Of a stretch of DNA of 64,000 nucleotides, positions 51,357 through 60,054 are shown in pieces. The DNA is taken from IMG/VR virus record IMGVR_UViG_3300021137_000001, positions 62,001-126,000 of that record. One strand, given 5' to 3'. The notes beneath the pieces were generated by a model. That model did no database searches and was not told the DNA's origin. It saw nothing but the letters and a program-made list of their open reading frames with translations. The position numbers were made by a program, and so were the translations under genes. Positions within the stretch are counted from its first letter, which is position 1. Each line of letters opens with the position of its first letter.

Positions 51357-51380
51357 ATGAAGATTGGAATTATCGGATAA
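51357..51380 (+). pseudogene. Orphan start of the nucleotide-sugar dehydrogenase (MKIGIIG*)
   Basis: Rossmann-type start; GGAATTATCGG duplicated at 52155-52165. Confidence 0.75.
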
Positions 51381-51387
51381 ATACTTT

Positions 51388-52143
51388 ATGCATAATTCTT
51401 CTCAACCTTATACCTATCTTATTGGATGGAGCAAATATAAAAAATATTATTACGGAGTTAGGTACGCTAAAAATTGTTTACCAACTGATTTATGGATTAA
51501 ATATTTCACCTCATCATTGATTGTTGCATCGACCCGAGTAGAACTCGGCGAGCCGGATATTATACAAGTTCGAAAAATATTTGTAACTAAAGAACAAGCA
51601 AGAAACTGGGAAACAAAGGTATTGAAACGAATGAAGGTAGTTGTTAGCGAAATGTTTCTTAATAAGAATGATAGACCTGCGCCACCAATAAGTAATCGAC
51701 CTATGTCAGAATATAATAAGAAAAAATTATTAGAAGCTAAATTAGGCAAACCTAGATCTGAAGTAACTAAACAAAAAATTAAAGAAGCAAGAGTTAACCA
51801 AGATATGAATTGCCGACTGGGGCATATTGTATCAGTAGAAACAAGACAAAAAATTCGTGATGCAAATTTAGGTAAAACAATGTCAGCTGACACAAAAGAC
51901 AAAATTTCAGCAGGCAACAAAGGAAAACATTTTGATAAACGATCAGTAGAAACAAGACAAAAAATTCGTGATGCAAATTTAGGTAAAACAATGTCAGCTG
52001 ACACAAAAGACAAAATTTCAGCAGGCAACAAAGGGAAACCAAAACCAATCACACAATGCCCGCATTGTTTAAAATTTGGTGGAGTTTCACAAATGCAACA
52101 GTGGCATTTTAATAAATGTAAACTTTTTAAGAAGGAAGTATAA
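51388..52143 (+). mobile_element. GIY-YIG-like homing endonuclease with NUMOD3 repeats
   Basis: PYTYLIGW...YYYGVR, YFTSS, CPHC..WHFNKC. Confidence 0.82.
51831..52034 (+). repeat. Exact 93-bp direct repeat (period 111 nt) inside the endonuclease
   Basis: 51831-51923 equals 51942-52034. Confidence 0.9.
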
Positions 52144-52934
52144 TGGCAATTATCGGAATTATCGGGTTTGGGTATGTCGGTGGCGCAGTAGCAAGTAGCT
52201 ATGCTGAAGAGAAATTATTAATCAACGACCCTATTGTTCATCCAGCATCGTCAGTTAGTTACGCAACAATGATGAAAAAATGTCGTGCAATATTTGTATG
52301 TGTGCCAACTCCGGAATCAGAGGATGGCACTTGTAATATAAGCATTATGACATCAGTATTAAATGGATTAAAAGGTTACGATGGTTTAGTAATCTGCAAA
52401 TGTACTGCTCCTCCCGATATATATAAACAATTAGAACACGACTTAGATCTTAAACTTGTACATGTTCCAGAGTTTTTAACGCAAGCACGTGCAAATGATG
52501 ATTATATCAACCCACATAAAATAGTAGTTGGCTGTAAGAAAAAATTACGCGAAGAAGTTGCTGATGTGATAATGGCAAGTGCTGTTAACTTTGACAGAGA
52601 TAATATCGAATACTGTGATATTGCTACTGCAAGTTTCTTTAAGTACTTCGCTAACAATATGCTGGCTATCAAAGTTGTATTGAACAACGAGTTTTCTGTA
52701 TTAGCAGGTGCGATGGGTGTTAAGTGGGAAGATATTGCTAGCATAGCATCAACCGATTCGAGACTCGGTGACACACATTGGTCAGTACCGGGCCCAGACG
52801 GACAAGTTGGCTTTGGTGGTGCTTGCTTTCCAAAAGATACAGAAGCATTTGCAAAACTTGCGAAGCCACATAATGTAAAATTATCTGTGCTTAATGCCGC
52901 AATACTGGCTAATAAACTAATGCGTGACGAATAA
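52143..52934 (+). CDS. UDP-glucose/GDP-mannose dehydrogenase-like protein
   Basis: GFGYVG, CVPTP, PEFL, GFGGACFPKD. Confidence 0.9.
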   Translation: MAIIGIIGFGYVGGAVASSYAEEKLLINDPIVHPASSVSYATMMKKCRAIFVCVPTPESEDGTCNISIMTSVLNGLKGYDGLVICKCTAPPDIYKQLEHDLDLKLVHVPEFLTQARANDDYINPHKIVVGCKKKLREEVADVIMASAVNFDRDNIEYCDIATASFFKYFANNMLAIKVVLNNEFSVLAGAMGVKWEDIASIASTDSRLGDTHWSVPGPDGQVGFGGACFPKDTEAFAKLAKPHNVKLSVLNAAILANKLMRDE

Positions 52935-52962
52935 TAAATATAAGATAATTAAGAGAAACTCG

Positions 52963-54018
52963 ATGAACAAGATATTATTCGTACTCAAACGTAAAGACAA
53001 CTTTAACGCAGTTGTTGACTCGCACGTCGGGGTGTCGACTGGACTTTATAACTCTGCAAGTTTTATGAACAACATGCTTAACGATAGCGGAGTTGAAAGC
53101 AAGATGGTTGTTGTTCCAGATAACAACGCCATCGATAGAGAAGTAACAGCATATCGCCCAACACATGTAATCATCGAAGCACTTTGGGTAGTGCCAGAAA
53201 AGTTTATTATTCTAAGCAAACTCCACCCGACAGTAACATGGATTATTAGACTACATAGTGAAATGCCATTCTTAGCAGGTGAAGGTATGGCAATGGATTG
53301 GATTGGCGAATACGCAAGTTTTAAAAATATTGTTATTGCCGCCAACGCACCACGTATGTTAAGTGAAGTACGTTTCTTCTTGCAATGTAAGAATGGTTGG
53401 ACAGACGAGAAAACAAACAGCAAAGTAATTTATTTTCCTAATTATTATCCAACAGAGTTTGTACAAAAACCTTATATGGCCGCCGACAAAGAATTTATTG
53501 ACATTGGCTGCTTTGGTGCAGTCCGTCCGTTAAAGAATCATATGCTACAAGCATTTGCTTCACTTAAATTTGCAAATAAGATAGGTAAGAAATTACGCTT
53601 TCATATTAACTCTGGCAGATTAGAAATGAAAGGCGAACCAGTGTTAAACAACTTACGTGGACTGTTTCAACACTTAGCAGAAAAAGGTCATGTAGTTATC
53701 AGTCATGGTTGGACACATAGAGATGACTTCTTATTGCTATGTGCGCAGATGGATATTGGTATGCAAGTTAGTTTCTCTGAAACATTTAACATAGTTGGAG
53801 CTGACTTTATTAGTCAAGGTGTTCCGCTATTGGGAAGTAGTGAGATTCCGTGGTCGAGTAATACATTTAATAGTGACCCAACAAGTAGTGATGATATATT
53901 TCAGAAGTTAATGCTAACACATAACAATCCTGAGAAGAATATTATGCAACATCAGGGATTATTAACTAAGTATGTAAGTGAAACACAAGGTATATGGCAA
54001 GACTATTTTAAAGGGTAA
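52963..54018 (+). CDS. Glycosyltransferase-like protein (GT-B)
   Basis: GAVRPLKN, SETFNIVGAD. Confidence 0.65.
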   Translation: MNKILFVLKRKDNFNAVVDSHVGVSTGLYNSASFMNNMLNDSGVESKMVVVPDNNAIDREVTAYRPTHVIIEALWVVPEKFIILSKLHPTVTWIIRLHSEMPFLAGEGMAMDWIGEYASFKNIVIAANAPRMLSEVRFFLQCKNGWTDEKTNSKVIYFPNYYPTEFVQKPYMAADKEFIDIGCFGAVRPLKNHMLQAFASLKFANKIGKKLRFHINSGRLEMKGEPVLNNLRGLFQHLAEKGHVVISHGWTHRDDFLLLCAQMDIGMQVSFSETFNIVGADFISQGVPLLGSSEIPWSSNTFNSDPTSSDDIFQKLMLTHNNPEKNIMQHQGLLTKYVSETQGIWQDYFKG

Positions 54019-54022
54019 CAAA

Positions 54023-54241
54023 ATGAGCGTACATCACAAGAAACATCATGTAAAGATACACAAATGGATACACGGGATATTAGAAGTAGTACATCACAAT
54101 TTTGAATCATTGGAAGAAGCATTAGGATTTGCTGATGAACATTCTGCTAACAAAGAACATTCCGGACATCAAGTTAAAGTGTACAACGAAGATAACGAAT
54201 TAGTACATACTACTAACTGCTATCACGATACTTACGCATAA
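54023..54241 (+). CDS. His-rich small protein
   Basis: 72 aa, His-rich. Confidence 0.55.
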   Translation: MSVHHKKHHVKIHKWIHGILEVVHHNFESLEEALGFADEHSANKEHSGHQVKVYNEDNELVHTTNCYHDTYA

Positions 54242-54356
54242 ATTAGATGTCTTTAATGGTTTTACGTATGTTAAATGGTGGTTTTCGGTGCTACTATAGT
54301 TATAAGTACTAGTAACAACACAACGTTGTTTTAGACTTTTATCTAGGAGAATTATT

Positions 54357-54428
54357 ATGTGGACTACACCAGCAGTTACTGAAATGAGATTTGGTATGGA
54401 AATTTGTATGTATGTGATGAACAAATAA
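54357..54428 (+). CDS. pqqA: PQQ precursor peptide PqqA (MWTTPAVTEMRFGMEICMYVMNK), not in the ORF track
   Basis: W-x-x-P...R-F-G-x-E-x-x-x-Y pattern; AGGAG SD; own terminator. Confidence 0.88.
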   Translation: MWTTPAVTEMRFGMEICMYVMNK

Positions 54429-54446
54429 TTATTGTTCTAAGTATAG

Positions 54447-54470
54447 AAAAGACACTCCGGTGTCTTTTTT
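54447..54470 (+). terminator. Intrinsic terminator after pqqA
   Basis: AAAAGACAC-TCCG-GTGTCTTTTTT. Confidence 0.85.
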
Positions 54471-54546
54471 AATGGCTAAATAATCATTGACAGTAGAACA
54501 ATTTAGTGTTATAATAGTACTTTAAATAATAACTTAGGTACATATT

Positions 54547-54810
54547 ATGTCAAAAATAGCTTCAGTTGAGCAATACAATATCGATAACTGCGACGCAGTA
54601 TTTGATGGTAATCGATTCCAATTAATTTTAGCCGCAGGCGTTCGAGCGCATGAGATTGCAACAGCTCGTGTGACTGCATCACGTAATGCTGGCGCGACCG
54701 GAGTTCAAGTAAGGCATGATAATCTTGCTGTAGTTGCGGCACTACTTGAAGTTGACACTGGCAAGTTTGGTAAAGAGTATTTAAACAAAGTAGGCAAGAC
54801 AGGTAAGTAA
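54547..54810 (+). CDS. rpoZ: RNA polymerase omega subunit-like protein
   Basis: NRFQLILAAGVRAHEI...VVAALLEVDTG. Confidence 0.7.
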   Translation: MSKIASVEQYNIDNCDAVFDGNRFQLILAAGVRAHEIATARVTASRNAGATGVQVRHDNLAVVAALLEVDTGKFGKEYLNKVGKTGK

Positions 54811-54860
54811 CAATTTTATCCGGTTAAGGCATAAATACTCTACTAGGGGTGCTTTAACCA

Positions 54861-55280
54861 ATGACTAAAAAAGATAAGATTTATAAATGTTTAAATTGTG
54901 ATGCTATAATTCCGTTTAAAGGATATACATATACACACAAATACTGTAATAATAAATGTCAAAGTGAGTTAAGAGCAAAAGATGCGCTCGATAAACACAA
55001 AGTGGCATTTTTTGAAGGAAGTTGTAAAAGTAGGCCGAGAATTAGGCAGATACTTGCAGAAATTCGCGGATATAAATGTGAATGCTGTGGATTGTCGGAG
55101 TGGCAAGGTAATTCGATTGTGTTGCAAGTGGATCATATTAATGGTGATCCATATAATGACAATCCGGATAACTTGAGACTTATTTGTCCTAATTGTCATA
55201 GCCAAACCGATACATTTGCTGGAGCCAATAGAGGTAACGGTAGATGGAGTAAAGAAGGACTTGCAAGGTATTACAAGTAA
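54861..55280 (+). mobile_element. HNH endonuclease upstream of tRNAs
   Basis: CECC, LQVDHING, NLRLICPNCH. Confidence 0.88.
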
Positions 55281-55293
55281 TTTAATTTTAATT

Positions 55294-55369
55294 GGGTCGA
55301 TAACTCACTCGGCGAGAGTACTGTGCTCATAACGCAGAAGGCAGGGATCATAACCCTGGCGACCCACCA
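55294..55369 (+). tRNA. tRNA-Met/Ile2 (CAT) with atypical T-loop
   Basis: Cloverleaf, loop CTCATAA, CCA; T-loop ATCATAA. Confidence 0.75.
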
Positions 55370-55374
55370 ACAAA

Positions 55375-55452
55375 GCGTCCGTAGCTCATCTGGACTAGAG
55401 CATGGGATTTCTACTCCCAGGGTAGCTGGTTCGAATCCAGCCGGGCGCACCA
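55375..55452 (+). tRNA. tRNA-Arg (TCT)
   Basis: TGGGA-TTTCTAC-TCCCA, GGTTCGAATCC, CCA. Confidence 0.92.
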
Positions 55453-55473
55453 CTTTTTATATAAGGAAACACA

Positions 55474-55665
55474 ATGAGAACAAAGTCAGAATTTGATATT
55501 GCAATGGAAGAATTTTTAGCCAACGGTGGCGAAGTAAAACAAATAGCACGTGGCGTACAAAGTGAAACAGCAACAACAAACTTCTGGGGCGCACCAAAGA
55601 AAAAAGCCGCAGTAGAAGCAGTAAATGAGTTAGGCGCAACAGGTATTGACGTAATAGAAGAATAA
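55474..55665 (+). CDS. Small hypothetical protein
   Basis: AAGGA SD; EEFLANGGEVKQI motif. Confidence 0.65.
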   Translation: MRTKSEFDIAMEEFLANGGEVKQIARGVQSETATTNFWGAPKKKAAVEAVNELGATGIDVIEE

Positions 55666-55722
55666 TAATATCAGTTCAAAAATAAAATATAAATATATTA
55701 GTAATAATGGAGGTAACTCGAC

Positions 55723-56370
55723 TTGCACAATCCTGTAGAAAAACCAACTTGGTTATATAAACCTATCGATGATATCCCTGAATTGAATAAAATTCAAAAG
55801 GAATGTTTTCGAATCTATTCGGCTGTAAAGAAAGATATATGCAAAGATGTTGGCTGGGCCATTGCTGGAATAGAATTAGATATAATGAAAAAACTTGCAC
55901 CAAATTATATTAATTTTTTAAAAAAATTAGGGTTATACGAGATTTATGCCGGTACAGCATTTTCTGCTAGTATAGGGATACAAAAATATCCTTGTCCTGT
56001 ACACGTTGATTGTAAAGACTGGCGCCAATTACCATTTTCACTTAATATACCAGTTGTTGGATGTGAGGATAGTTATACTGTTTTTTATGATGTTGATGAA
56101 TCATCCGATCCTGCAAACGCATTACCAGATACATGGGATAATAATTATATGAAAATGAATAAAATTGAAGGAGTGGTCGGATATTCCGAAAAAACAGCAA
56201 AAGAAATTGGCAGAATGCCTGCTACCCAACCTGCATTTGTAAACATTGGTATTCCTCACCGCCCTGTGACAAATCATACTAATCTAAGATTAGTTATGTT
56301 ATCGAGATTTACACCTGACATATTTGATTATGTAAATAATGACATATTTAAAACTAAATTATCAGAATAA
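55723..56370 (+). CDS. Putative 2OG-Fe(II)/cupin-like protein
   Basis: HVD...SLNIP...H pattern. Confidence 0.5.
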   Translation: MHNPVEKPTWLYKPIDDIPELNKIQKECFRIYSAVKKDICKDVGWAIAGIELDIMKKLAPNYINFLKKLGLYEIYAGTAFSASIGIQKYPCPVHVDCKDWRQLPFSLNIPVVGCEDSYTVFYDVDESSDPANALPDTWDNNYMKMNKIEGVVGYSEKTAKEIGRMPATQPAFVNIGIPHRPVTNHTNLRLVMLSRFTPDIFDYVNNDIFKTKLSE

Positions 56371-56411
56371 TACCAGTTCAAAAATAAATGATAAATAATT
56401 AGATAAAGTGC

Positions 56412-56440
56412 TTGACAAGAGTATAAATAGAATATATAAT
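56412..56440 (+). promoter_or_regulatory. Promoter of the tRNA array (sigma70 with nested late box)
   Basis: TTGACA-N17-TATAAT with TATAAATA inside the spacer. Confidence 0.85.
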
Positions 56441-56474
56441 AGTTGTATAAGTTAATAAGGAAGTGAGAAAACAA

Positions 56475-56600
56475 ATGTTCAAATCGTTACATCAGTTTAA
56501 GATATCAACACTCGTGCAGTTATGCGGCGTGTCTTCTTATTGGTCAGCGATTGAGATGAATACGAGTGATCGCGCACCGAATAGAAAGGGTTTAAGTTAA
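56475..56600 (+). CDS. Putative attenuator leader peptide (41 aa, all 20 amino acids)
   Basis: MFKSLHQFKISTLVQLCGVSSYWSAIEMNTSDRAPNRKGLS*; last codons form the antiterminator 5' arm. Confidence 0.65.
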   Translation: MFKSLHQFKISTLVQLCGVSSYWSAIEMNTSDRAPNRKGLS

Positions 56601-56661
56601 CGTTTATTATTATATATGAATTTTTACTTAAACCTTAGAATTAAAAACTCTAAGGTTTTTT
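56587..56661 (+). terminator. Antiterminator/terminator switch ahead of the tRNA array
   Basis: 56587-56597 pairs with 56626-56636; alternative terminator CCTTAGA/TCTAAGG plus T6. Confidence 0.75.
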
Positions 56662-56775
56662 GCTTTTAGCAGTAAGTGTTTTGGAAACGAGGTCCATAAC
56701 TAAACACTATAAAGATTGTAAGTTGAACGGGCGGAACTAGGGATGAAGCACCTTGTGTGGTGTGAAAAATCTAGC

Positions 56776-56856
56776 ATAATAAAGTACATTAATCGGCAAC
56801 TAGGTCCCACGCAATGTGGATTATGTCAGAGGCGAGTAATTAGTGTGCTTTATTAT
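56776..56856 (+). ncRNA. Long-stem small RNA unit 1
   Basis: 18-bp closing stem with two G-U pairs. Confidence 0.5.
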
Positions 56857-56900
56857 ACGCATTCACATGAGTGCGGTACACAATTTGTAGTGCATTTTGT

Positions 56901-56975
56901 CAGGGTATAGCTCAGCCTGGCCAGAGTCCTCGGTTTGGAACCGAGTTGTCGTAAGTTCGAATCTTACTACCCTGA
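56901..56975 (+). tRNA. tRNA-Pro (TGG), no encoded CCA
   Basis: CTCGG-TTTGGAA-CCGAG; acceptor stem extended by a flanking inverted repeat. Confidence 0.88.
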
Positions 56976-57080
56976 CAAAATGCATTACTTAAAAAGAGGT
57001 TAACACATACGGTAATTGGTAGTATAATAGCTACTTGAAGTTAAGTAATACGCTCTTTAACAGTTTGGAAGTTTTACAAT

Positions 57081-57153
57081 ATCGCATTCATCTAGTGGCC
57101 TAAGATACTGCCCTTTCACGGCAGGTACACGGATTCGAATTCCGTATGCGATA
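57081..57153 (+). tRNA. tRNA-Glu (TTC), no encoded CCA
   Basis: CTGCC-CTTTCAC-GGCAG; ATCGCAT/ATGCGAT acceptor. Confidence 0.88.
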
Positions 57154-57182
57154 CACATAGTAAATTTTGTATAAATACAAGT

Positions 57183-57794
57183 ATGACATATTACTACTTG
57201 TATCAAATCACTAATTTAGTGAATGCAAAAATTTACGTTGGAGTACATAAAACGAAATCATTAGATGACGGATATATGGGCTCTGGAAAAATTATTCAAT
57301 GTGCAATTAAAAAACACGGAATTGATAATTTTAAAAAAGACATACTTGAGACTTTTGACACATCAGAAGCTATGTATGCACGTGAGAAAGAAATAGTAAC
57401 AGATCAGTTTCTGTTACGCGAAGATACCTATAACTTACGTAGAGGCGGAACTGGCGGATTTGATTATATAAACAAGCAACCATGGGTGCATACTACAAAC
57501 AGGATAATAGGAGATATAAAGAAAAGTAAAACATTAAAAGGTAGACGCCCTTCTGAAAATACGTTAATAGCAGTAAGGTTAATGCATCAAGACGGAAGAG
57601 TAAAGTATGATACGTTTACTGGTAAACAGCATACCATCGAAACTAAACAAAAAATGTCAATTGCGAAAAAAGGAAAAGGATGCAATCAGCATAACAGTCA
57701 ATTCGGTACTATATGGATAACGGATGGTATAAGTAACAAAAAAATAAAGAAAGATGTTACTATTCCAGAAGGATGGAATAGAGGTAGAAGTTAA
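57183..57794 (+). mobile_element. GIY-YIG (SegB-like) homing endonuclease in the tRNA array
   Basis: YLYQITN...IYVGVH, YMGSG, YNLRRGG. Confidence 0.88.
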
Positions 57795-57798
57795 GACC

Positions 57799-57904
57799 AT
57801 ATTAAAACATATTTGACCAAGTCGGTGTTCCTTGATGCTAGGATTAGAGCGGACAGCAGTCCGCGAGATGTAGTTGCGATATTACAGCAAGTGTGTTTTA
57901 ATAT
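57799..57904 (+). ncRNA. Long-stem small RNA unit 2
   Basis: 17-bp closing stem with G-U pairs; internal GCGGAC/GTCCGC hairpin. Confidence 0.5.
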
Positions 57905-57915
57905 AGTAAGTCTAT

Positions 57916-57989
57916 TGGCTCATGGTGTAGTGGTAGCACAACAGGTTTTGATCCTGTTAGTTGTAGTTCGATTCTACATGGGCCTGCCA
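57916..57989 (+). tRNA. tRNA-Gln (TTG)
   Basis: ACAGG-TTTTGAT-CCTGT, CCA. Confidence 0.9.
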
Positions 57990-58058
57990 AGTTTTAATGG
58001 AGTGGAAATACCATACTATCAGTCCGTTATGTATAAATACATATATAGGAGAACTGAT

Positions 58059-58457
58059 ATGTTTAAGAACAGTAAGAAACAAGGTGACGCTGGATTAGGG
58101 CAAGCAATAGCATATTTTACAATGAAAGGATATGATGTTGCGTTGCCACTAACAGATAGCGCAGACTGGGATATGATTGTTGAGATAGATGGTGAACTTA
58201 AAAGAGTCCAAGTTAAAACATCTAAACAACTATCTAAAACGGGTATAATGATGTTTAATGCTAATGTAAATGGCGGCAACATGTCATTTAATAAAAAACC
58301 TAAACTTATACCAGAACAACAATGGGATTTATTGTTCTTACATCACTTAGTGACAAATAAGCAAGCATTGATTCCTAAAGAAGCACTAACTACAAAAGGT
58401 CAAGTGAACTTAGGTAGTAGTCAATGTAAGTATAAAGATTTTATGATTAATGGATGA
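58059..58457 (+). mobile_element. PD-(D/E)XK endonuclease (I-Ssp6803I-like family)
   Basis: KQGD..., WDMIVE..RVQVKT; AGGAG SD; stop overlaps tRNA-Tyr. Confidence 0.75.
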
Positions 58458-58537
58458 GCGGCGCAGTTGGAGAGGCGCGGGAGACTGTAAATCTCTTTTC
58501 CCTGAATGAGTAGGTTCGAATCTTACCTCATCCACCA
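58452..58537 (+). tRNA. tRNA-Tyr (GTA)
   Basis: GGAGA-CTGTAAA-TCTCT, long variable arm, CCA. Confidence 0.9.
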
Positions 58538-58542
58538 ATTTA

Positions 58543-58619
58543 GTTGTGTCGTCGGTTCGAAGCCAACCTGTAATCAAGCGAAATAGCAGTTACAGTAGTT
58601 TACTTGGTAAAACAACAAC
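58543..58619 (+). ncRNA. Circularly permuted, anticodon-less tRNA-like element
   Basis: T-arm and 3' acceptor strand precede the 5' acceptor strand and D-arm; ends pair GTTGT/ACAAC. Confidence 0.65.
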
Positions 58620-58651
58620 AATTTTTGTAGTAAATTTAATAGGAGCAACAC

Positions 58652-58672
58652 ATGAAGCGAGTTAAACTTTAG
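58652..58672 (+). CDS. Mini-ORF MKRVKL* upstream of tRNA-Lys
   Basis: AGGAG SD 6 nt before ATG; AAG and AAA codons. Confidence 0.65.
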   Translation: MKRVKL

Positions 58673-58743
58673 TGTCGTCTTTAATCCCATTGTACTGTAT
58701 TAAAGGTAACGGCACGTTAAATCTTTAATACAGTACAATGGGA
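58672..58743 (+). promoter_or_regulatory. Two-state RNA switch overlapping the tRNA-Lys 5' end
   Basis: Perfect 21-bp inverted repeat 58685-58705/58723-58743 versus alternative 58672-58685/58699-58715. Confidence 0.7.
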
Positions 58744-58815
58744 GTATGGTGAAATTGGTTATCACATGGGACTTTTAATCCTTCGTTCAGAGTTCAAGTC
58801 TCTGTGCTCCTACCA
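58740..58815 (+). tRNA. tRNA-Lys (TTT)
   Basis: Loop CTTTTAA; weak anticodon stem TGGGA/TCCTT; CCA. Confidence 0.85.
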
Positions 58816-59661: not shown

Positions 59662-60054
59662 ATGTACTACGATGAAGTAAAGTTTGAAGAATTAAAAGGT
59701 AAGGTATTAGTTAGTGCAACAGTCTCTGACTATAAAGATGAAATGAAGTTTGTAACAACAGACGGCGAAATATATACTTTGTATCACGCACAAGATTGTT
59801 GTGAATCAGTGGAAATTGAATCTATCGTTGGTGACTTAGCTGATTTAGTTGGCGAAGAAATCTTAATGGCAGAAGAAGCACAAAACTTATTTGACTTGAT
59901 TAAATCTGCAGGAGTCGAAGAAGAAGATGAATACGGTTCACACACTTGGACATTTTACAAACTAGCAACTCGCAAAGGGTACGTTGACATCAGATGGTAT
60001 GGTTCGAGCAACGGGTACTATTCAGAGGAAGTTTCTTTTAAAAGAGAGAAATAA
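59662..60054 (+). CDS. Conserved phage hypothetical protein
   Basis: HAQDCCESV, WTFYKL, SNGYYSE; sigma70 promoter and AGGAGG SD. Confidence 0.75.
   Translation: MYYDEVKFEELKGKVLVSATVSDYKDEMKFVTTDGEIYTLYHAQDCCESVEIESIVGDLADLVGEEILMAEEAQNLFDLIKSAGVEEEDEYGSHTWTFYKLATRKGYVDIRWYGSSNGYYSEEVSFKREK

What the first reader, a model, noticed from the sequence alone, without database searches (positions are those of the whole stretch)
58543..58619. Circularly permuted tRNA mimic with no anticodon loop
Seen, in order: GTTGT, GTC, T-arm (GTCGG-TTCGAAG-CCAAC), acceptor 3' strand CTGTAAT, a linker, acceptor 5' strand GTTACAG, TA, D-arm (GTTT-ACTTGGTA-AAAC), A, ACAAC. The 3' half precedes the 5' half, the acceptor stem is capped by a loop, and the RNA opens where the anticodon loop should be. 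Known: permuted tRNA genes occur in some algae and archaea; I do not know of them in phage. Inference: an unchargeable L-shaped decoy for tRNA-binding defence nucleases or sensors, or a processing element. It sits between tRNA-Tyr and the Lys switch.
Basis: partly seen in the sequence, partly recalled or inferred. Interest (0 to 1): 0.78.

Follow-up and report, generated by a model that had tools for sequence, protein, structure and literature searches.

The report
Anticodon-less, permuted tRNA-shaped RNA module
A freshwater jumbo phage carries, inside its tRNA gene cluster, a 77-base module that has every part of a tRNA except the anticodon loop, in swapped order. The layout matches the tRNA-like domain of bacterial Y RNAs, but there is no Y-RNA protein partner, and close relatives of the phage do without it.

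Summary
Window 58543-58619 (+) reads: closing-stem strand, 3-nt variable region, T-arm, acceptor 3' strand, 14-nt cap, acceptor 5' strand, U8-A9, D-arm, A26, closing-stem strand. When the halves are swapped and any anticodon loop is added, ARAGORN calls a tRNA. It does so for 0 of 20,000 random genomic 77-mers and 0 of 20,000 shuffles.

The layout is not unprecedented. It is the topology of the tRNA-like domain of bacterial/phage YrlA Y RNAs, which is also the best Rfam hit (26-31 bits, gathering score 69). The module is not a YrlA member: it has no Ro-binding motif and the phage has no TROVE/Rsr gene. It is also not a decodable permuted tRNA or a tmRNA.

It is a single-copy accessory element. 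Near-identical copies lie in at least four different left-hand contexts in freshwater metagenomes and metatranscriptome contigs. It is precisely absent from two relatives, which have an empty site. Between two genomes whose nearby spacers are only 61-78% identical, the module is 98.7% identical, like the real tRNAs.

Best reading (about 0.5): a constrained, co-transcribed tRNA mimic that tRNA enzymes handle (RNase P at the capped 7-bp acceptor), serving as a processing or decoy element. Main rival (about 0.28): a young, neutral rearrangement relic in a cluster full of homing endonucleases.

The parts
58543..58547 (+). Closing-stem 5' strand GTTGT (equivalent to tRNA positions 39-43, the anticodon-stem 3' strand)
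   Evidence: Pairs with ACAAC at 58615-58619. ARAGORN draws it as the anticodon stem after the swap. A shifted register using the overlapping ACAAC at 58612-58616 is also possible.
58548..58550 (+). Short variable region GTC (3 nt; 4 nt in the register Rfam uses)
   Evidence: the YrlA alignment places UGUC here.
58551..58567 (+). T-arm GTCGG-TTCGAAG-CCAAC. It has a C.A mismatch at 58553/58565 in this copy and is a perfect GTTGG/CCAAC stem in L083 and L085.
   Evidence: Thermodynamic stem probability is 0.34 here and 0.99 in L083.
58568..58574 (+). Acceptor 3' strand CTGTAAT
   Evidence: Forms 7 bp (one G.U) with 58589-58595; helix probability 0.98.
58575..58588 (+). 14-nt loop capping the acceptor stem. 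C58575 is at the discriminator position and no CCA is encoded.
58589..58595 (+). Acceptor 5' strand GTTACAG. The predicted RNase P site is between A58588 and G58589 (inference).
   Evidence: The inference rests on the precedent of M. smegmatis YrlA, whose 7-bp acceptor is cut by RNase P (PMC4201824).
58596..58614 (+). U8-A9, the D-arm GTTT-ACTTGGTA-AAAC (with A14, G18-G19, A21), and A26
   Evidence: The low thermodynamic probability of the D stem is matched by several genuine tRNAs of the same cluster.
58615..58619 (+). Closing-stem 3' strand ACAAC (tRNA positions 27-31). Position 58615 is G in other copies, which keeps the pair as G.U.
   Evidence: A58615G in all four runs laid.
58540..58622 (+). 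The 83-nt stretch that is present here and precisely absent from relatives L006/L089 and L088. A short CAAT(TT) repeat sits at both borders.
   Evidence: Alignment A1, L088, repeat D5.
58452..58537 (+). tRNA-Tyr(GTA) with encoded CCA, 5 nt upstream of the module. This is the left neighbour that differs between genomes.
58620..58681 (+). Conserved spacer directly downstream, with an AGGAG Shine-Dalgarno site and the 6-codon mini-ORF MKRVKL (58653-58673). It is also present in genomes that lack the module.
58740..58815 (+). tRNA-Lys(TTT), the right neighbour. It is 100% identical in L083.

Best explanation
The element is a stand-alone tRNA-shaped RNA module. It has the T-arm, a loop-capped 7-bp acceptor stem and the D-arm, and a 5-bp helix closes it where the anticodon arm would be. 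This is the same circular permutation as the tRNA-like domain of YrlA Y RNAs. It is a single-copy, dispensable accessory insertion in the Tyr-Lys spacer of the tRNA operon of a small clade of uncultured freshwater jumbo phages. Shown: the structure, the single copy, the presence/absence pattern, and the tRNA-level sequence conservation. Inferred: it is co-transcribed with tRNA-Tyr and tRNA-Lys and folds into an L-shape with a normal elbow, so host tRNA enzymes treat it as a tRNA. RNase P would cut 5' of G58589, as it cuts the 7-bp acceptor of M. smegmatis YrlA. The 14-nt cap would then be trimmed, and Psi55, D and CCA enzymes may act. The product would be a closed or two-piece tRNA body without an anticodon that cannot decode. 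Its likely use is tRNA mimicry. Either it is a built-in RNase P cleavage and stability cassette that separates tRNA-Tyr from the conserved leader/tRNA-Lys unit, or it is a sponge for proteins that recognise the tRNA elbow or acceptor.
For: Structure: (0/20,000 random and 0/20,000 shuffled controls). Topology: the best Rfam hit is YrlA over the full model, 25.9 bits here and 31.0 bits in L083, against 13.4 bits (partial model) for a real tRNA-dimer junction. Precedent: YrlA modules are RNase P, TruB, DusA and CCA-enzyme substrates (PMC4201824). Constraint: between the window and L083 the module differs at 1 of 77 positions (97.6% when the 5-nt leader is counted) and tRNA-Lys is 100% identical, while the hairpin between them is 67% identical, the Lys-His spacer 61% and the Asp-Met spacer 78%. 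The only two variable sites are in stems, and one keeps its pair (A-U to G.U). Persistence: near-identical copies sit behind at least four different left flanks, namely the window/X12 tRNA-Tyr, another tRNA-Tyr variant in X21, an unrelated 105-nt piece in L083/L085, and another flank in X20/X25. RNA libraries: contigs spanning the module occur in three metatranscriptome runs from two studies. The strand and consensus loops fit only the + strand, which is the strand of all 13 tRNAs.
Against: Two relatives with the same Tyr-spacer-Lys order lack it precisely, with the junction CCA-GTTTTGTAGT, so it is not essential. The window copy carries a pair-breaking C.A in the T-stem. All known copies are at least 98.7% identical, so there is no covariation and the conservation could reflect recent spread by gene conversion. 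Contigs in RNA libraries do not prove transcription or a stable small RNA (caveat). No partner or processing protein is encoded by the phage: no TROVE, RtcB, Rnl1, Rnl2 or CCA-adding enzyme. In longer contexts, thermodynamic folding does not favour the closing stem or D-arm, although genuine tRNAs of the cluster behave the same way. The module has been found only in one narrow clade.
Confidence: 0.5

Rival explanations
1. It is a neutral by-product of tRNA-gene rearrangement. For example, two tandem copies of a tRNA lost their outer halves, or double-strand breaks and gene conversion by the many homing endonucleases of this cluster joined a 3' half to a 5' half. It may still fold and be cut, but it does nothing for the phage and simply has not had time to decay.
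For: The cluster is crowded with homing endonuclease genes (GIY-YIG, PD-(D/E)XK, HNH, NUMOD3). It has lost about half the tRNAs of its relatives (13 against 22-26). Tandem same-isotype tRNAs exist in relatives. The module is an indel with short direct repeats at its borders. Relatives live without it. The window copy has a T-stem mismatch. In L083 and X20/X25 a second copy of the closing-stem strand ([G/A]CAAC plus a 12-nt loop) lies just upstream, as a truncated first tRNA copy would leave.
Against: No parent tRNA was found. The best similarity to 353 tRNAs of related loci is only generic, and the exact halves occur nowhere else in IMG/VR or in the genome collection. The apparent similarity of the flanks to degenerate further copies is not better than shuffles. 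Both breakpoints would have to fall at the anticodon loop. The module is conserved like real tRNAs while adjacent spacers are 61-78% identical. It has survived at least four independent replacements of its left neighbour.
Confidence: 0.28
2. It is a genuine Y RNA of the YrlA kind that the phage supplies to the host's Rsr (Ro60)/PNPase machinery.
For: YrlA is the best Rfam match, with full-length model alignment. The domain order is the same. Some jumbo phages do carry TROVE proteins with tRNA-like partners (PMC7824862; PMC4201824).
Against: The scores are 26-31 bits against a gathering score of 69. The Ro-binding 5' strand motif GNCGAAN0-1G is absent, and the would-be terminal helix is only a few A-U pairs. 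In the window its 5' strand is the 3' end of tRNA-Tyr. There is no TROVE gene in this complete genome or in five relatives' records. The nearly invariant YrlA T- and D-stem sequences are not shared (alignment).
Confidence: 0.07
3. It is a true circularly permuted tRNA gene. The transcript ends are joined and the acceptor cap is removed, giving a working tRNA as in Cyanidioschyzon merolae.
For: The 3' half precedes the 5' half with a short linker, and the body passes ARAGORN once an anticodon loop is supplied.
Against: The natural flanks supply no canonical 7-nt loop (no U33), and ARAGORN finds nothing with them. The left flank differs between copies, so no fixed anticodon exists. There is no RtcB, Rnl1 or Rnl2 in the phage. 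No bulge-helix-bulge splicing system is known in bacteria (own knowledge).
Confidence: 0.03
4. It matters at the DNA level only, as a homing-endonuclease target mimic or recombination hotspot that marks the border of the exchangeable tRNA-Tyr cassette.
For: Recombination breakpoints fall repeatedly at its 5' border. A PD-(D/E)XK homing endonuclease gene abuts tRNA-Tyr.
Against: This does not explain why all RNA-level tRNA features (G.U pair, T- and D-loop consensus, four helices) are kept on the tRNA strand. No cleavage-site information is available.
Confidence: 0.07

Closest known systems
tRNA-like domain of YrlA-type bacterial/phage Y RNAs (Rfam RF02553; Chen et al. 2014, PMC4201824)
   Same: The order and topology are identical: helix strand, short V region, T-arm, loop-capped acceptor-like stem, UA, D-arm, helix strand. 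The T-loop and D-loop tertiary nucleotides are kept. The 7-bp acceptor matches the M. smegmatis YrlA that RNase P cuts. YrlA is the best Rfam hit.
   Different: The score is far below the family threshold. There is no Ro-binding helix or motif, no rsr/TROVE gene nearby or anywhere in the genome, and the T- and D-stem sequences differ. The module is embedded in a tRNA operon 5 nt after a tRNA rather than being a separate gene.
Circularly permuted tRNA genes (Cyanidioschyzon merolae, Thermofilum; own knowledge; reviewed in PMC4090602)
   Same: The 3' half is encoded upstream of the 5' half on one strand, and the acceptor strands are joined by a short intervening sequence.
   Different: Those genes reconstitute a full anticodon loop through a circular intermediate made by splicing endonuclease and ligase. 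Here there is no loop, the flanks vary, and that machinery is not evident.
Two-piece tmRNA from permuted ssrA genes (alpha-proteobacteria, cyanobacteria; own knowledge)
   Same: This is a bacterial precedent for a permuted tRNA-like domain whose capped acceptor is opened by RNase P and 3' trimming, leaving two base-paired pieces.
   Different: The module has no tag reading frame, pseudoknots or G3.U70 alanine identity, and it has a full D-arm. ARAGORN's tmRNA search (which includes permuted forms) finds nothing.
tRNA-like processing elements (mascRNA of MALAT1, gammaherpesvirus 68 tRNA-like/miRNA units; PMC8457004, PMC4337559 as listed)
   Same: These are non-decoding tRNA shapes embedded in longer transcripts and used to recruit RNase P and RNase Z as cleavage signals.
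   Different: They are in the normal, unpermuted order with free acceptor ends, and they are eukaryotic or animal-virus systems.

Membership tests
YrlA / Y RNA-like (RF02553) | Reaches the family's curated covariance-model score (69 bits) | tested here: not met
   25.9 bits in the window and 31.0 bits in L083.
YrlA / Y RNA-like (RF02553) | tRNA-like domain in the order T-arm, capped acceptor-like stem-loop, D-arm, closed by a helix | tested here: met
YrlA / Y RNA-like (RF02553) | Ro60/Rsr-binding module: a long terminal helix with the GNCGAAN0-1G motif in its 5' strand | tested here: not met
   There is no such motif in either context. The model's terminal helix aligns with many non-pairs or deletions, and in the window the 5' side is the end of tRNA-Tyr.
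YrlA / Y RNA-like (RF02553) | Encoded next to an rsr (TROVE) gene | tested here: not met
   There is no PF05731 match in the complete 329-kb genome or in five relatives' records. The host genome is unknown.
Permuted tRNA gene | 3' half upstream of the 5' half, with acceptor strands complementary across a short linker | tested here: met
Permuted tRNA gene | Joining the transcript ends recreates a canonical 7-nt anticodon loop | tested here: not met
   ARAGORN finds nothing with the natural flanks, and the left flank differs among copies.
Permuted tRNA gene | End-joining machinery is available (splicing endonuclease/ligase, or RtcB/Rnl) | tested here: inconclusive
   None is encoded in the phage. 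The host is unknown.
Canonical tRNA (RF00005) | Cloverleaf in native order with an anticodon arm | tested here: not met
   There is no tRNA call at 58543-58619 by ARAGORN or by Rfam, even at E<=10.
Two-piece (permuted) tmRNA | Tag reading frame, pseudoknots and alanine identity (G3.U70) | tested here: not met
   ARAGORN's tmRNA search is negative. The acceptor has U3-A70.

The most novel reading that the evidence does not exclude
This is a new class of Rsr-independent tRNA mimic carried by phages. It is a YrlA-like permuted tRNA body, lodged in the phage's own tRNA operon, that is selected as an anti-defence or host-takeover RNA. It might titrate a host factor or toxin that docks on the tRNA elbow or acceptor. 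Alternatively, after RNase P opening and CCA addition, it might serve as a two-piece substrate trap for acceptor-end-modifying toxins. It would be exchanged among phages as a small cassette.
Probability: 0.17. Interest if true: 0.75.

Novelty: new variant of a known kind. Interest (0 to 1): 0.45.

Why it matters
Phage tRNA clusters are now read mainly as counter-measures to tRNA-cleaving defences. A conserved, non-decoding tRNA body inside such a cluster would add an RNA-mimicry layer to that picture. It would also show that the YrlA-type permuted tRNA fold can work, or at least persist, without Ro60/Rsr, whose tRNA-like partner still has no assigned function. In practice, the module is a compact, testable candidate for an RNase P 'punctuation' cassette. 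If it is instead only a relic, it is a clean natural example of how permuted tRNA genes can arise in a cluster full of homing endonucleases.

Tried and rejected
(1) Close DNA relatives in the isolate phage collection: none. A distant search found only the tRNA-Tyr and tRNA-Lys genes.

(2) Parent tRNA: comparison with 353 tRNAs from 82 loci gave only generic D- and T-arm similarity. The exact halves occur nowhere else in IMG/VR, and the degenerate pattern has no hit in 185,579 prokaryote genomes.

(3) More family members: my own permuted-tRNA scanner and covariance model R1 over 1.18 Mb of related loci and five whole records found only the three near-identical copies. Every other hit, at 26.5 bits or less, was a tRNA-tRNA junction. 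The metagenome hits L086 and L087 were also tRNA dimers.

(4) The idea that the flanks are degenerate further copies of the halves (tandem-repeat origin): by eye there are shared short words (GTGTCGTC, AAGCGA, ACAGTAG), but local alignments are no better than shuffles. Dropped as evidence.

(5) Y RNA with a phage Rsr: there is no TROVE gene.

(6) Ligation-matured permuted tRNA: there is no RtcB, Rnl1 or Rnl2 and no usable loop.

(7) Own promoter or terminator: none is adjacent.

(8) Coding: only chance ORFs of 39 aa or fewer overlap the element.

(9) Third left-flank context (X20/X25): not retrievable from IMG/VR.

(10) The 130-aa neighbour protein used to fetch relatives turned out to be widespread in unrelated phages. 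Only L006-L009, L083, L085 and L088 count as close relatives.

Full report
**What is there.** The window belongs to a complete 329,321-bp virus record with direct terminal repeats and 37% G+C, from freshwater lake samples. All 13 of its tRNA genes lie on the + strand between 55294 and 61356. The T-stem has one C.A mismatch and the acceptor has one G.U pair. The nucleotides that build the tRNA core and elbow are all present: U8, A14, G18-G19, A21, G53-C61 and T54-T55-C56-R57-A58.

**More than chance.** In its native order the element is invisible to ARAGORN and to the Rfam tRNA model, even at E<=10.
- After swapping the halves and adding any 7-nt anticodon loop, ARAGORN calls a 74-nt tRNA.
- The same swap on 20,000 random genomic 77-mers and on 20,000 shuffles of the element gave no calls.
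- Sliding the swap through the whole cluster gave calls only at 58541-58543.
- Using the natural flanks as the loop gives nothing, so the lack of an anticodon loop is real.
- Thermodynamic folding supports the acceptor hairpin strongly (0.98) and the T-arm moderately (0.34 here, 0.99 in the L083 copy).
- The D-arm and closing stem are weak. Several genuine tRNAs of the same cluster are equally weak by this measure, so this does not count against a tRNA-like fold.

**What it resembles.** A permissive Rfam scan gave one relevant sub-threshold family, YrlA (Y RNA-like, RF02553).
- The alignment covers the full model, with 25.9 bits in the window and 31.0 bits for the L083 copy.
- A true tRNA-dimer junction in the same cluster scores only 13.4 bits, over part of the model.
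- Chen et al. 2014 (PMC4201824) describe the YrlA tRNA-like domain as this arrangement: T-arm, capped acceptor-like stem-loop, D-arm. They found it in more than 250 bacterial and phage species.
- They showed modification by TruB and DusA. [quoted passage not shown]
- The permuted, anticodon-less tRNA shape is therefore a known kind of RNA.

**Why it is not a YrlA member.**
- The score is far below the 69-bit threshold.
- The Ro-binding GNCGAAN0-1G strand and the long terminal helix are missing. In the window the 5' flank is simply the end of tRNA-Tyr.
- Neither this complete genome nor five relatives' records encode a TROVE protein.

**Why it is not a permuted tRNA gene or a tmRNA.**
- It is not a decodable permuted tRNA gene: there is no reconstitutable loop, the left flank varies, and the phage has no RtcB, Rnl1 or Rnl2.
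- It is not a two-piece tmRNA.

**Distribution.** Exact or degenerate pattern scans, a covariance model (R1) and my own scanner found the module only as near-identical copies.
- Identical fragments of the same phage: L001-L005.
- Two metagenome contigs, L083 and L085. In these the T-stem is a perfect GTTGG/CCAAC.
- Contigs of one DNA run (X12) and three metatranscriptome runs from two studies (X20, X25, X21). All four carry A58615G, which keeps the closing pair as G.U.
- The module is single-copy in its own genome.

**The left neighbour differs among copies.**
- Window and X12: a tRNA-Tyr followed by 5 nt.
- X21: the same junction, but a different tRNA-Tyr body, of the type seen in L091-L093.
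- L083 and L085: a degenerate tRNA-Tyr (27.8 bits) followed by an unrelated 105-nt piece.
- X20 and X25: yet another flank.

**The right neighbour is always the same.** It is a conserved spacer containing a Shine-Dalgarno site and the mini-ORF MKR[V/G]KL, then a hairpin, then tRNA-Lys.

**Empty sites.** Two relatives with the same Tyr-spacer-Lys order, L006/L089 and L088, lack the module precisely. Their junction is CCA-GTTTTGTAGT. In L083 the extra 184 nt are bounded by a TTTTGT direct repeat. In the window a CAAT(TT) repeat bounds the 83-nt difference. I cannot tell insertion from microhomology deletion.

**Evidence for constraint.** Aligning the window with L083 segment by segment gives these identities:

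| Segment | Identity |
|---|---|
| Module plus 5-nt leader | 97.6% (module alone: 1 of 77 differs) |
| Spacer with mini-ORF | 96.8% |
| Hairpin between spacer and tRNA-Lys | 67% |
| tRNA-Lys | 100% |
| Lys-His spacer | 61% |
| tRNA-His | 54% (a different gene) |
| tRNA-Asp | 89% |
| Asp-Met spacer | 78% |
| tRNA-Met | 96% |

The module is thus conserved like the working tRNAs, while unconstrained neighbours have diverged by 20-40%. It has also survived several replacements of the sequence immediately to its left. This is the main argument for function. The caveat is that homing endonucleases (GIY-YIG, PD-(D/E)XK, HNH, NUMOD3) make this cluster a mosaic. Patches of high identity can therefore also come from recent gene conversion. 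With only two variable sites there is no covariation test.

**Likely mechanism (inferred).** No promoter or terminator is adjacent, so the module should be transcribed with tRNA-Tyr and tRNA-Lys.
- A 7-bp acceptor stacked on a T-arm is the RNase P recognition unit, so cleavage is predicted 5' of G58589.
- The 14-nt cap would then be trimmed. No CCA is encoded, whereas the neighbouring tRNAs do encode it.
- The transcript would be severed between tRNA-Tyr and the leader/tRNA-Lys unit. The two products would stay paired through 12 bp and carry structured ends.
- Whether the benefit is processing or stability, or titration of a factor that binds the tRNA elbow or acceptor, cannot be decided here.
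- A module without an anticodon loop is a poor decoy for anticodon nucleases.

**Rivals.**
- A young neutral relic of tRNA rearrangement is the serious alternative. It fits the endonuclease-rich context, the loss of half the tRNAs relative to relatives (13 against 22-26), the dispensability, the window's T-stem mismatch, and the extra [G/A]CAAC strand upstream in L083 and X20/X25.
- Against the relic reading: no parent tRNA was found, the flanks show no significant homology to further copies, both breakpoints sit at the anticodon loop, and the conservation pattern argues for constraint.
- A true Y RNA acting with a host Rsr, a ligation-matured permuted tRNA, and a purely DNA-level role each get low probability, for the reasons given above.

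**Verdict.** The module is a new variant of a known kind: a YrlA-type permuted tRNA mimic without the Ro module, inside a phage tRNA operon. Its function is unproven. Interest is moderate.

Noticed in passing
window 58620-58746: Directly downstream lies a spacer that is 97-100% conserved, also in genomes without the module. It has an AGGAG Shine-Dalgarno site and a 6-codon mini-ORF (ATG 58653 to TAG 58673, MKRVKL, or MKRGKL in L006/L083) with two Lys codons. After it come two mutually exclusive structures. One is a hairpin pairing GUGUC...GGCAC and UCUUUAAUC...GAUUAAGG. The other is a 24-bp hairpin (58682-58705 with 58723-58746) that swallows the first 7 nt of tRNA-Lys. The arms differ between genomes while the loop GGCACGUUAAA is kept. 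It looks like a leader-peptide or attenuator-type control, or an RNase III site, for tRNA-Lys maturation.
   Followed up: partly
window 51364-58457: The tRNA cluster is crowded with homing-endonuclease-type ORFs: NUMOD3 (51364-52143), HNH (54861-55280), GIY-YIG/SegE-like (57183-57794) and PD-(D/E)XK PF11645 (58059-58457, its stop overlapping the start of tRNA-Tyr). This phage keeps 13 tRNAs, whereas close relatives have 22-26.
   Followed up: partly
window 58568-58595 against 58484-58496: The module's acceptor 3' strand CUGUAAU matches the anticodon loop of the adjacent tRNA-Tyr (CUGUAAA) at 6 of 7 positions. Its 5' strand GUUACAG, which contains the Tyr codon UAC, is therefore complementary to that loop (inverted repeat I2). 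By my rough estimate, a match of this size to one of the 13 tRNA loops is not rare by chance (about 0.2). Even so, the module always follows a tRNA-Tyr.
   Followed up: no
L085 263-387 (- strand): In this contig a further structured insertion of about 100 nt sits immediately after the module (ACAACAATTT | insertion | AAATTTAATAGG). It has no counterpart in the other loci. The Tyr-Lys spacer seems to be a hotspot for small insertions.
   Followed up: partly
L083 706-786; L091-L093: The tRNA-Tyr slot to the left of the module holds very different tRNA-Tyr versions in different genomes. One is below the Rfam threshold and missed by ARAGORN (27.8 bits, L083). Another is a type with an odd T-arm, GATGG-ATCGTTA-CCATC (L091-L093). 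This suggests cassette-like replacement of this gene.
   Followed up: no
window 58546-58553 and 58672-58679: The 8-mer GTGTCGTC occurs both at the start of the module and at the start of the downstream switch hairpin, where GUGUC pairs with GGCAC. It could allow cross-talk, but the chance expectation is about 0.1.
   Followed up: no
window 59662-60054: The 130-aa ORF just after the tRNA cluster belongs to a hypothetical-protein family that is conserved at 50-59% identity. It occurs in Bacillus SPO1-like phages and in Pseudomonas, Xanthomonas, Escherichia and many other phages (159 records). Its function is unknown.
   Followed up: no
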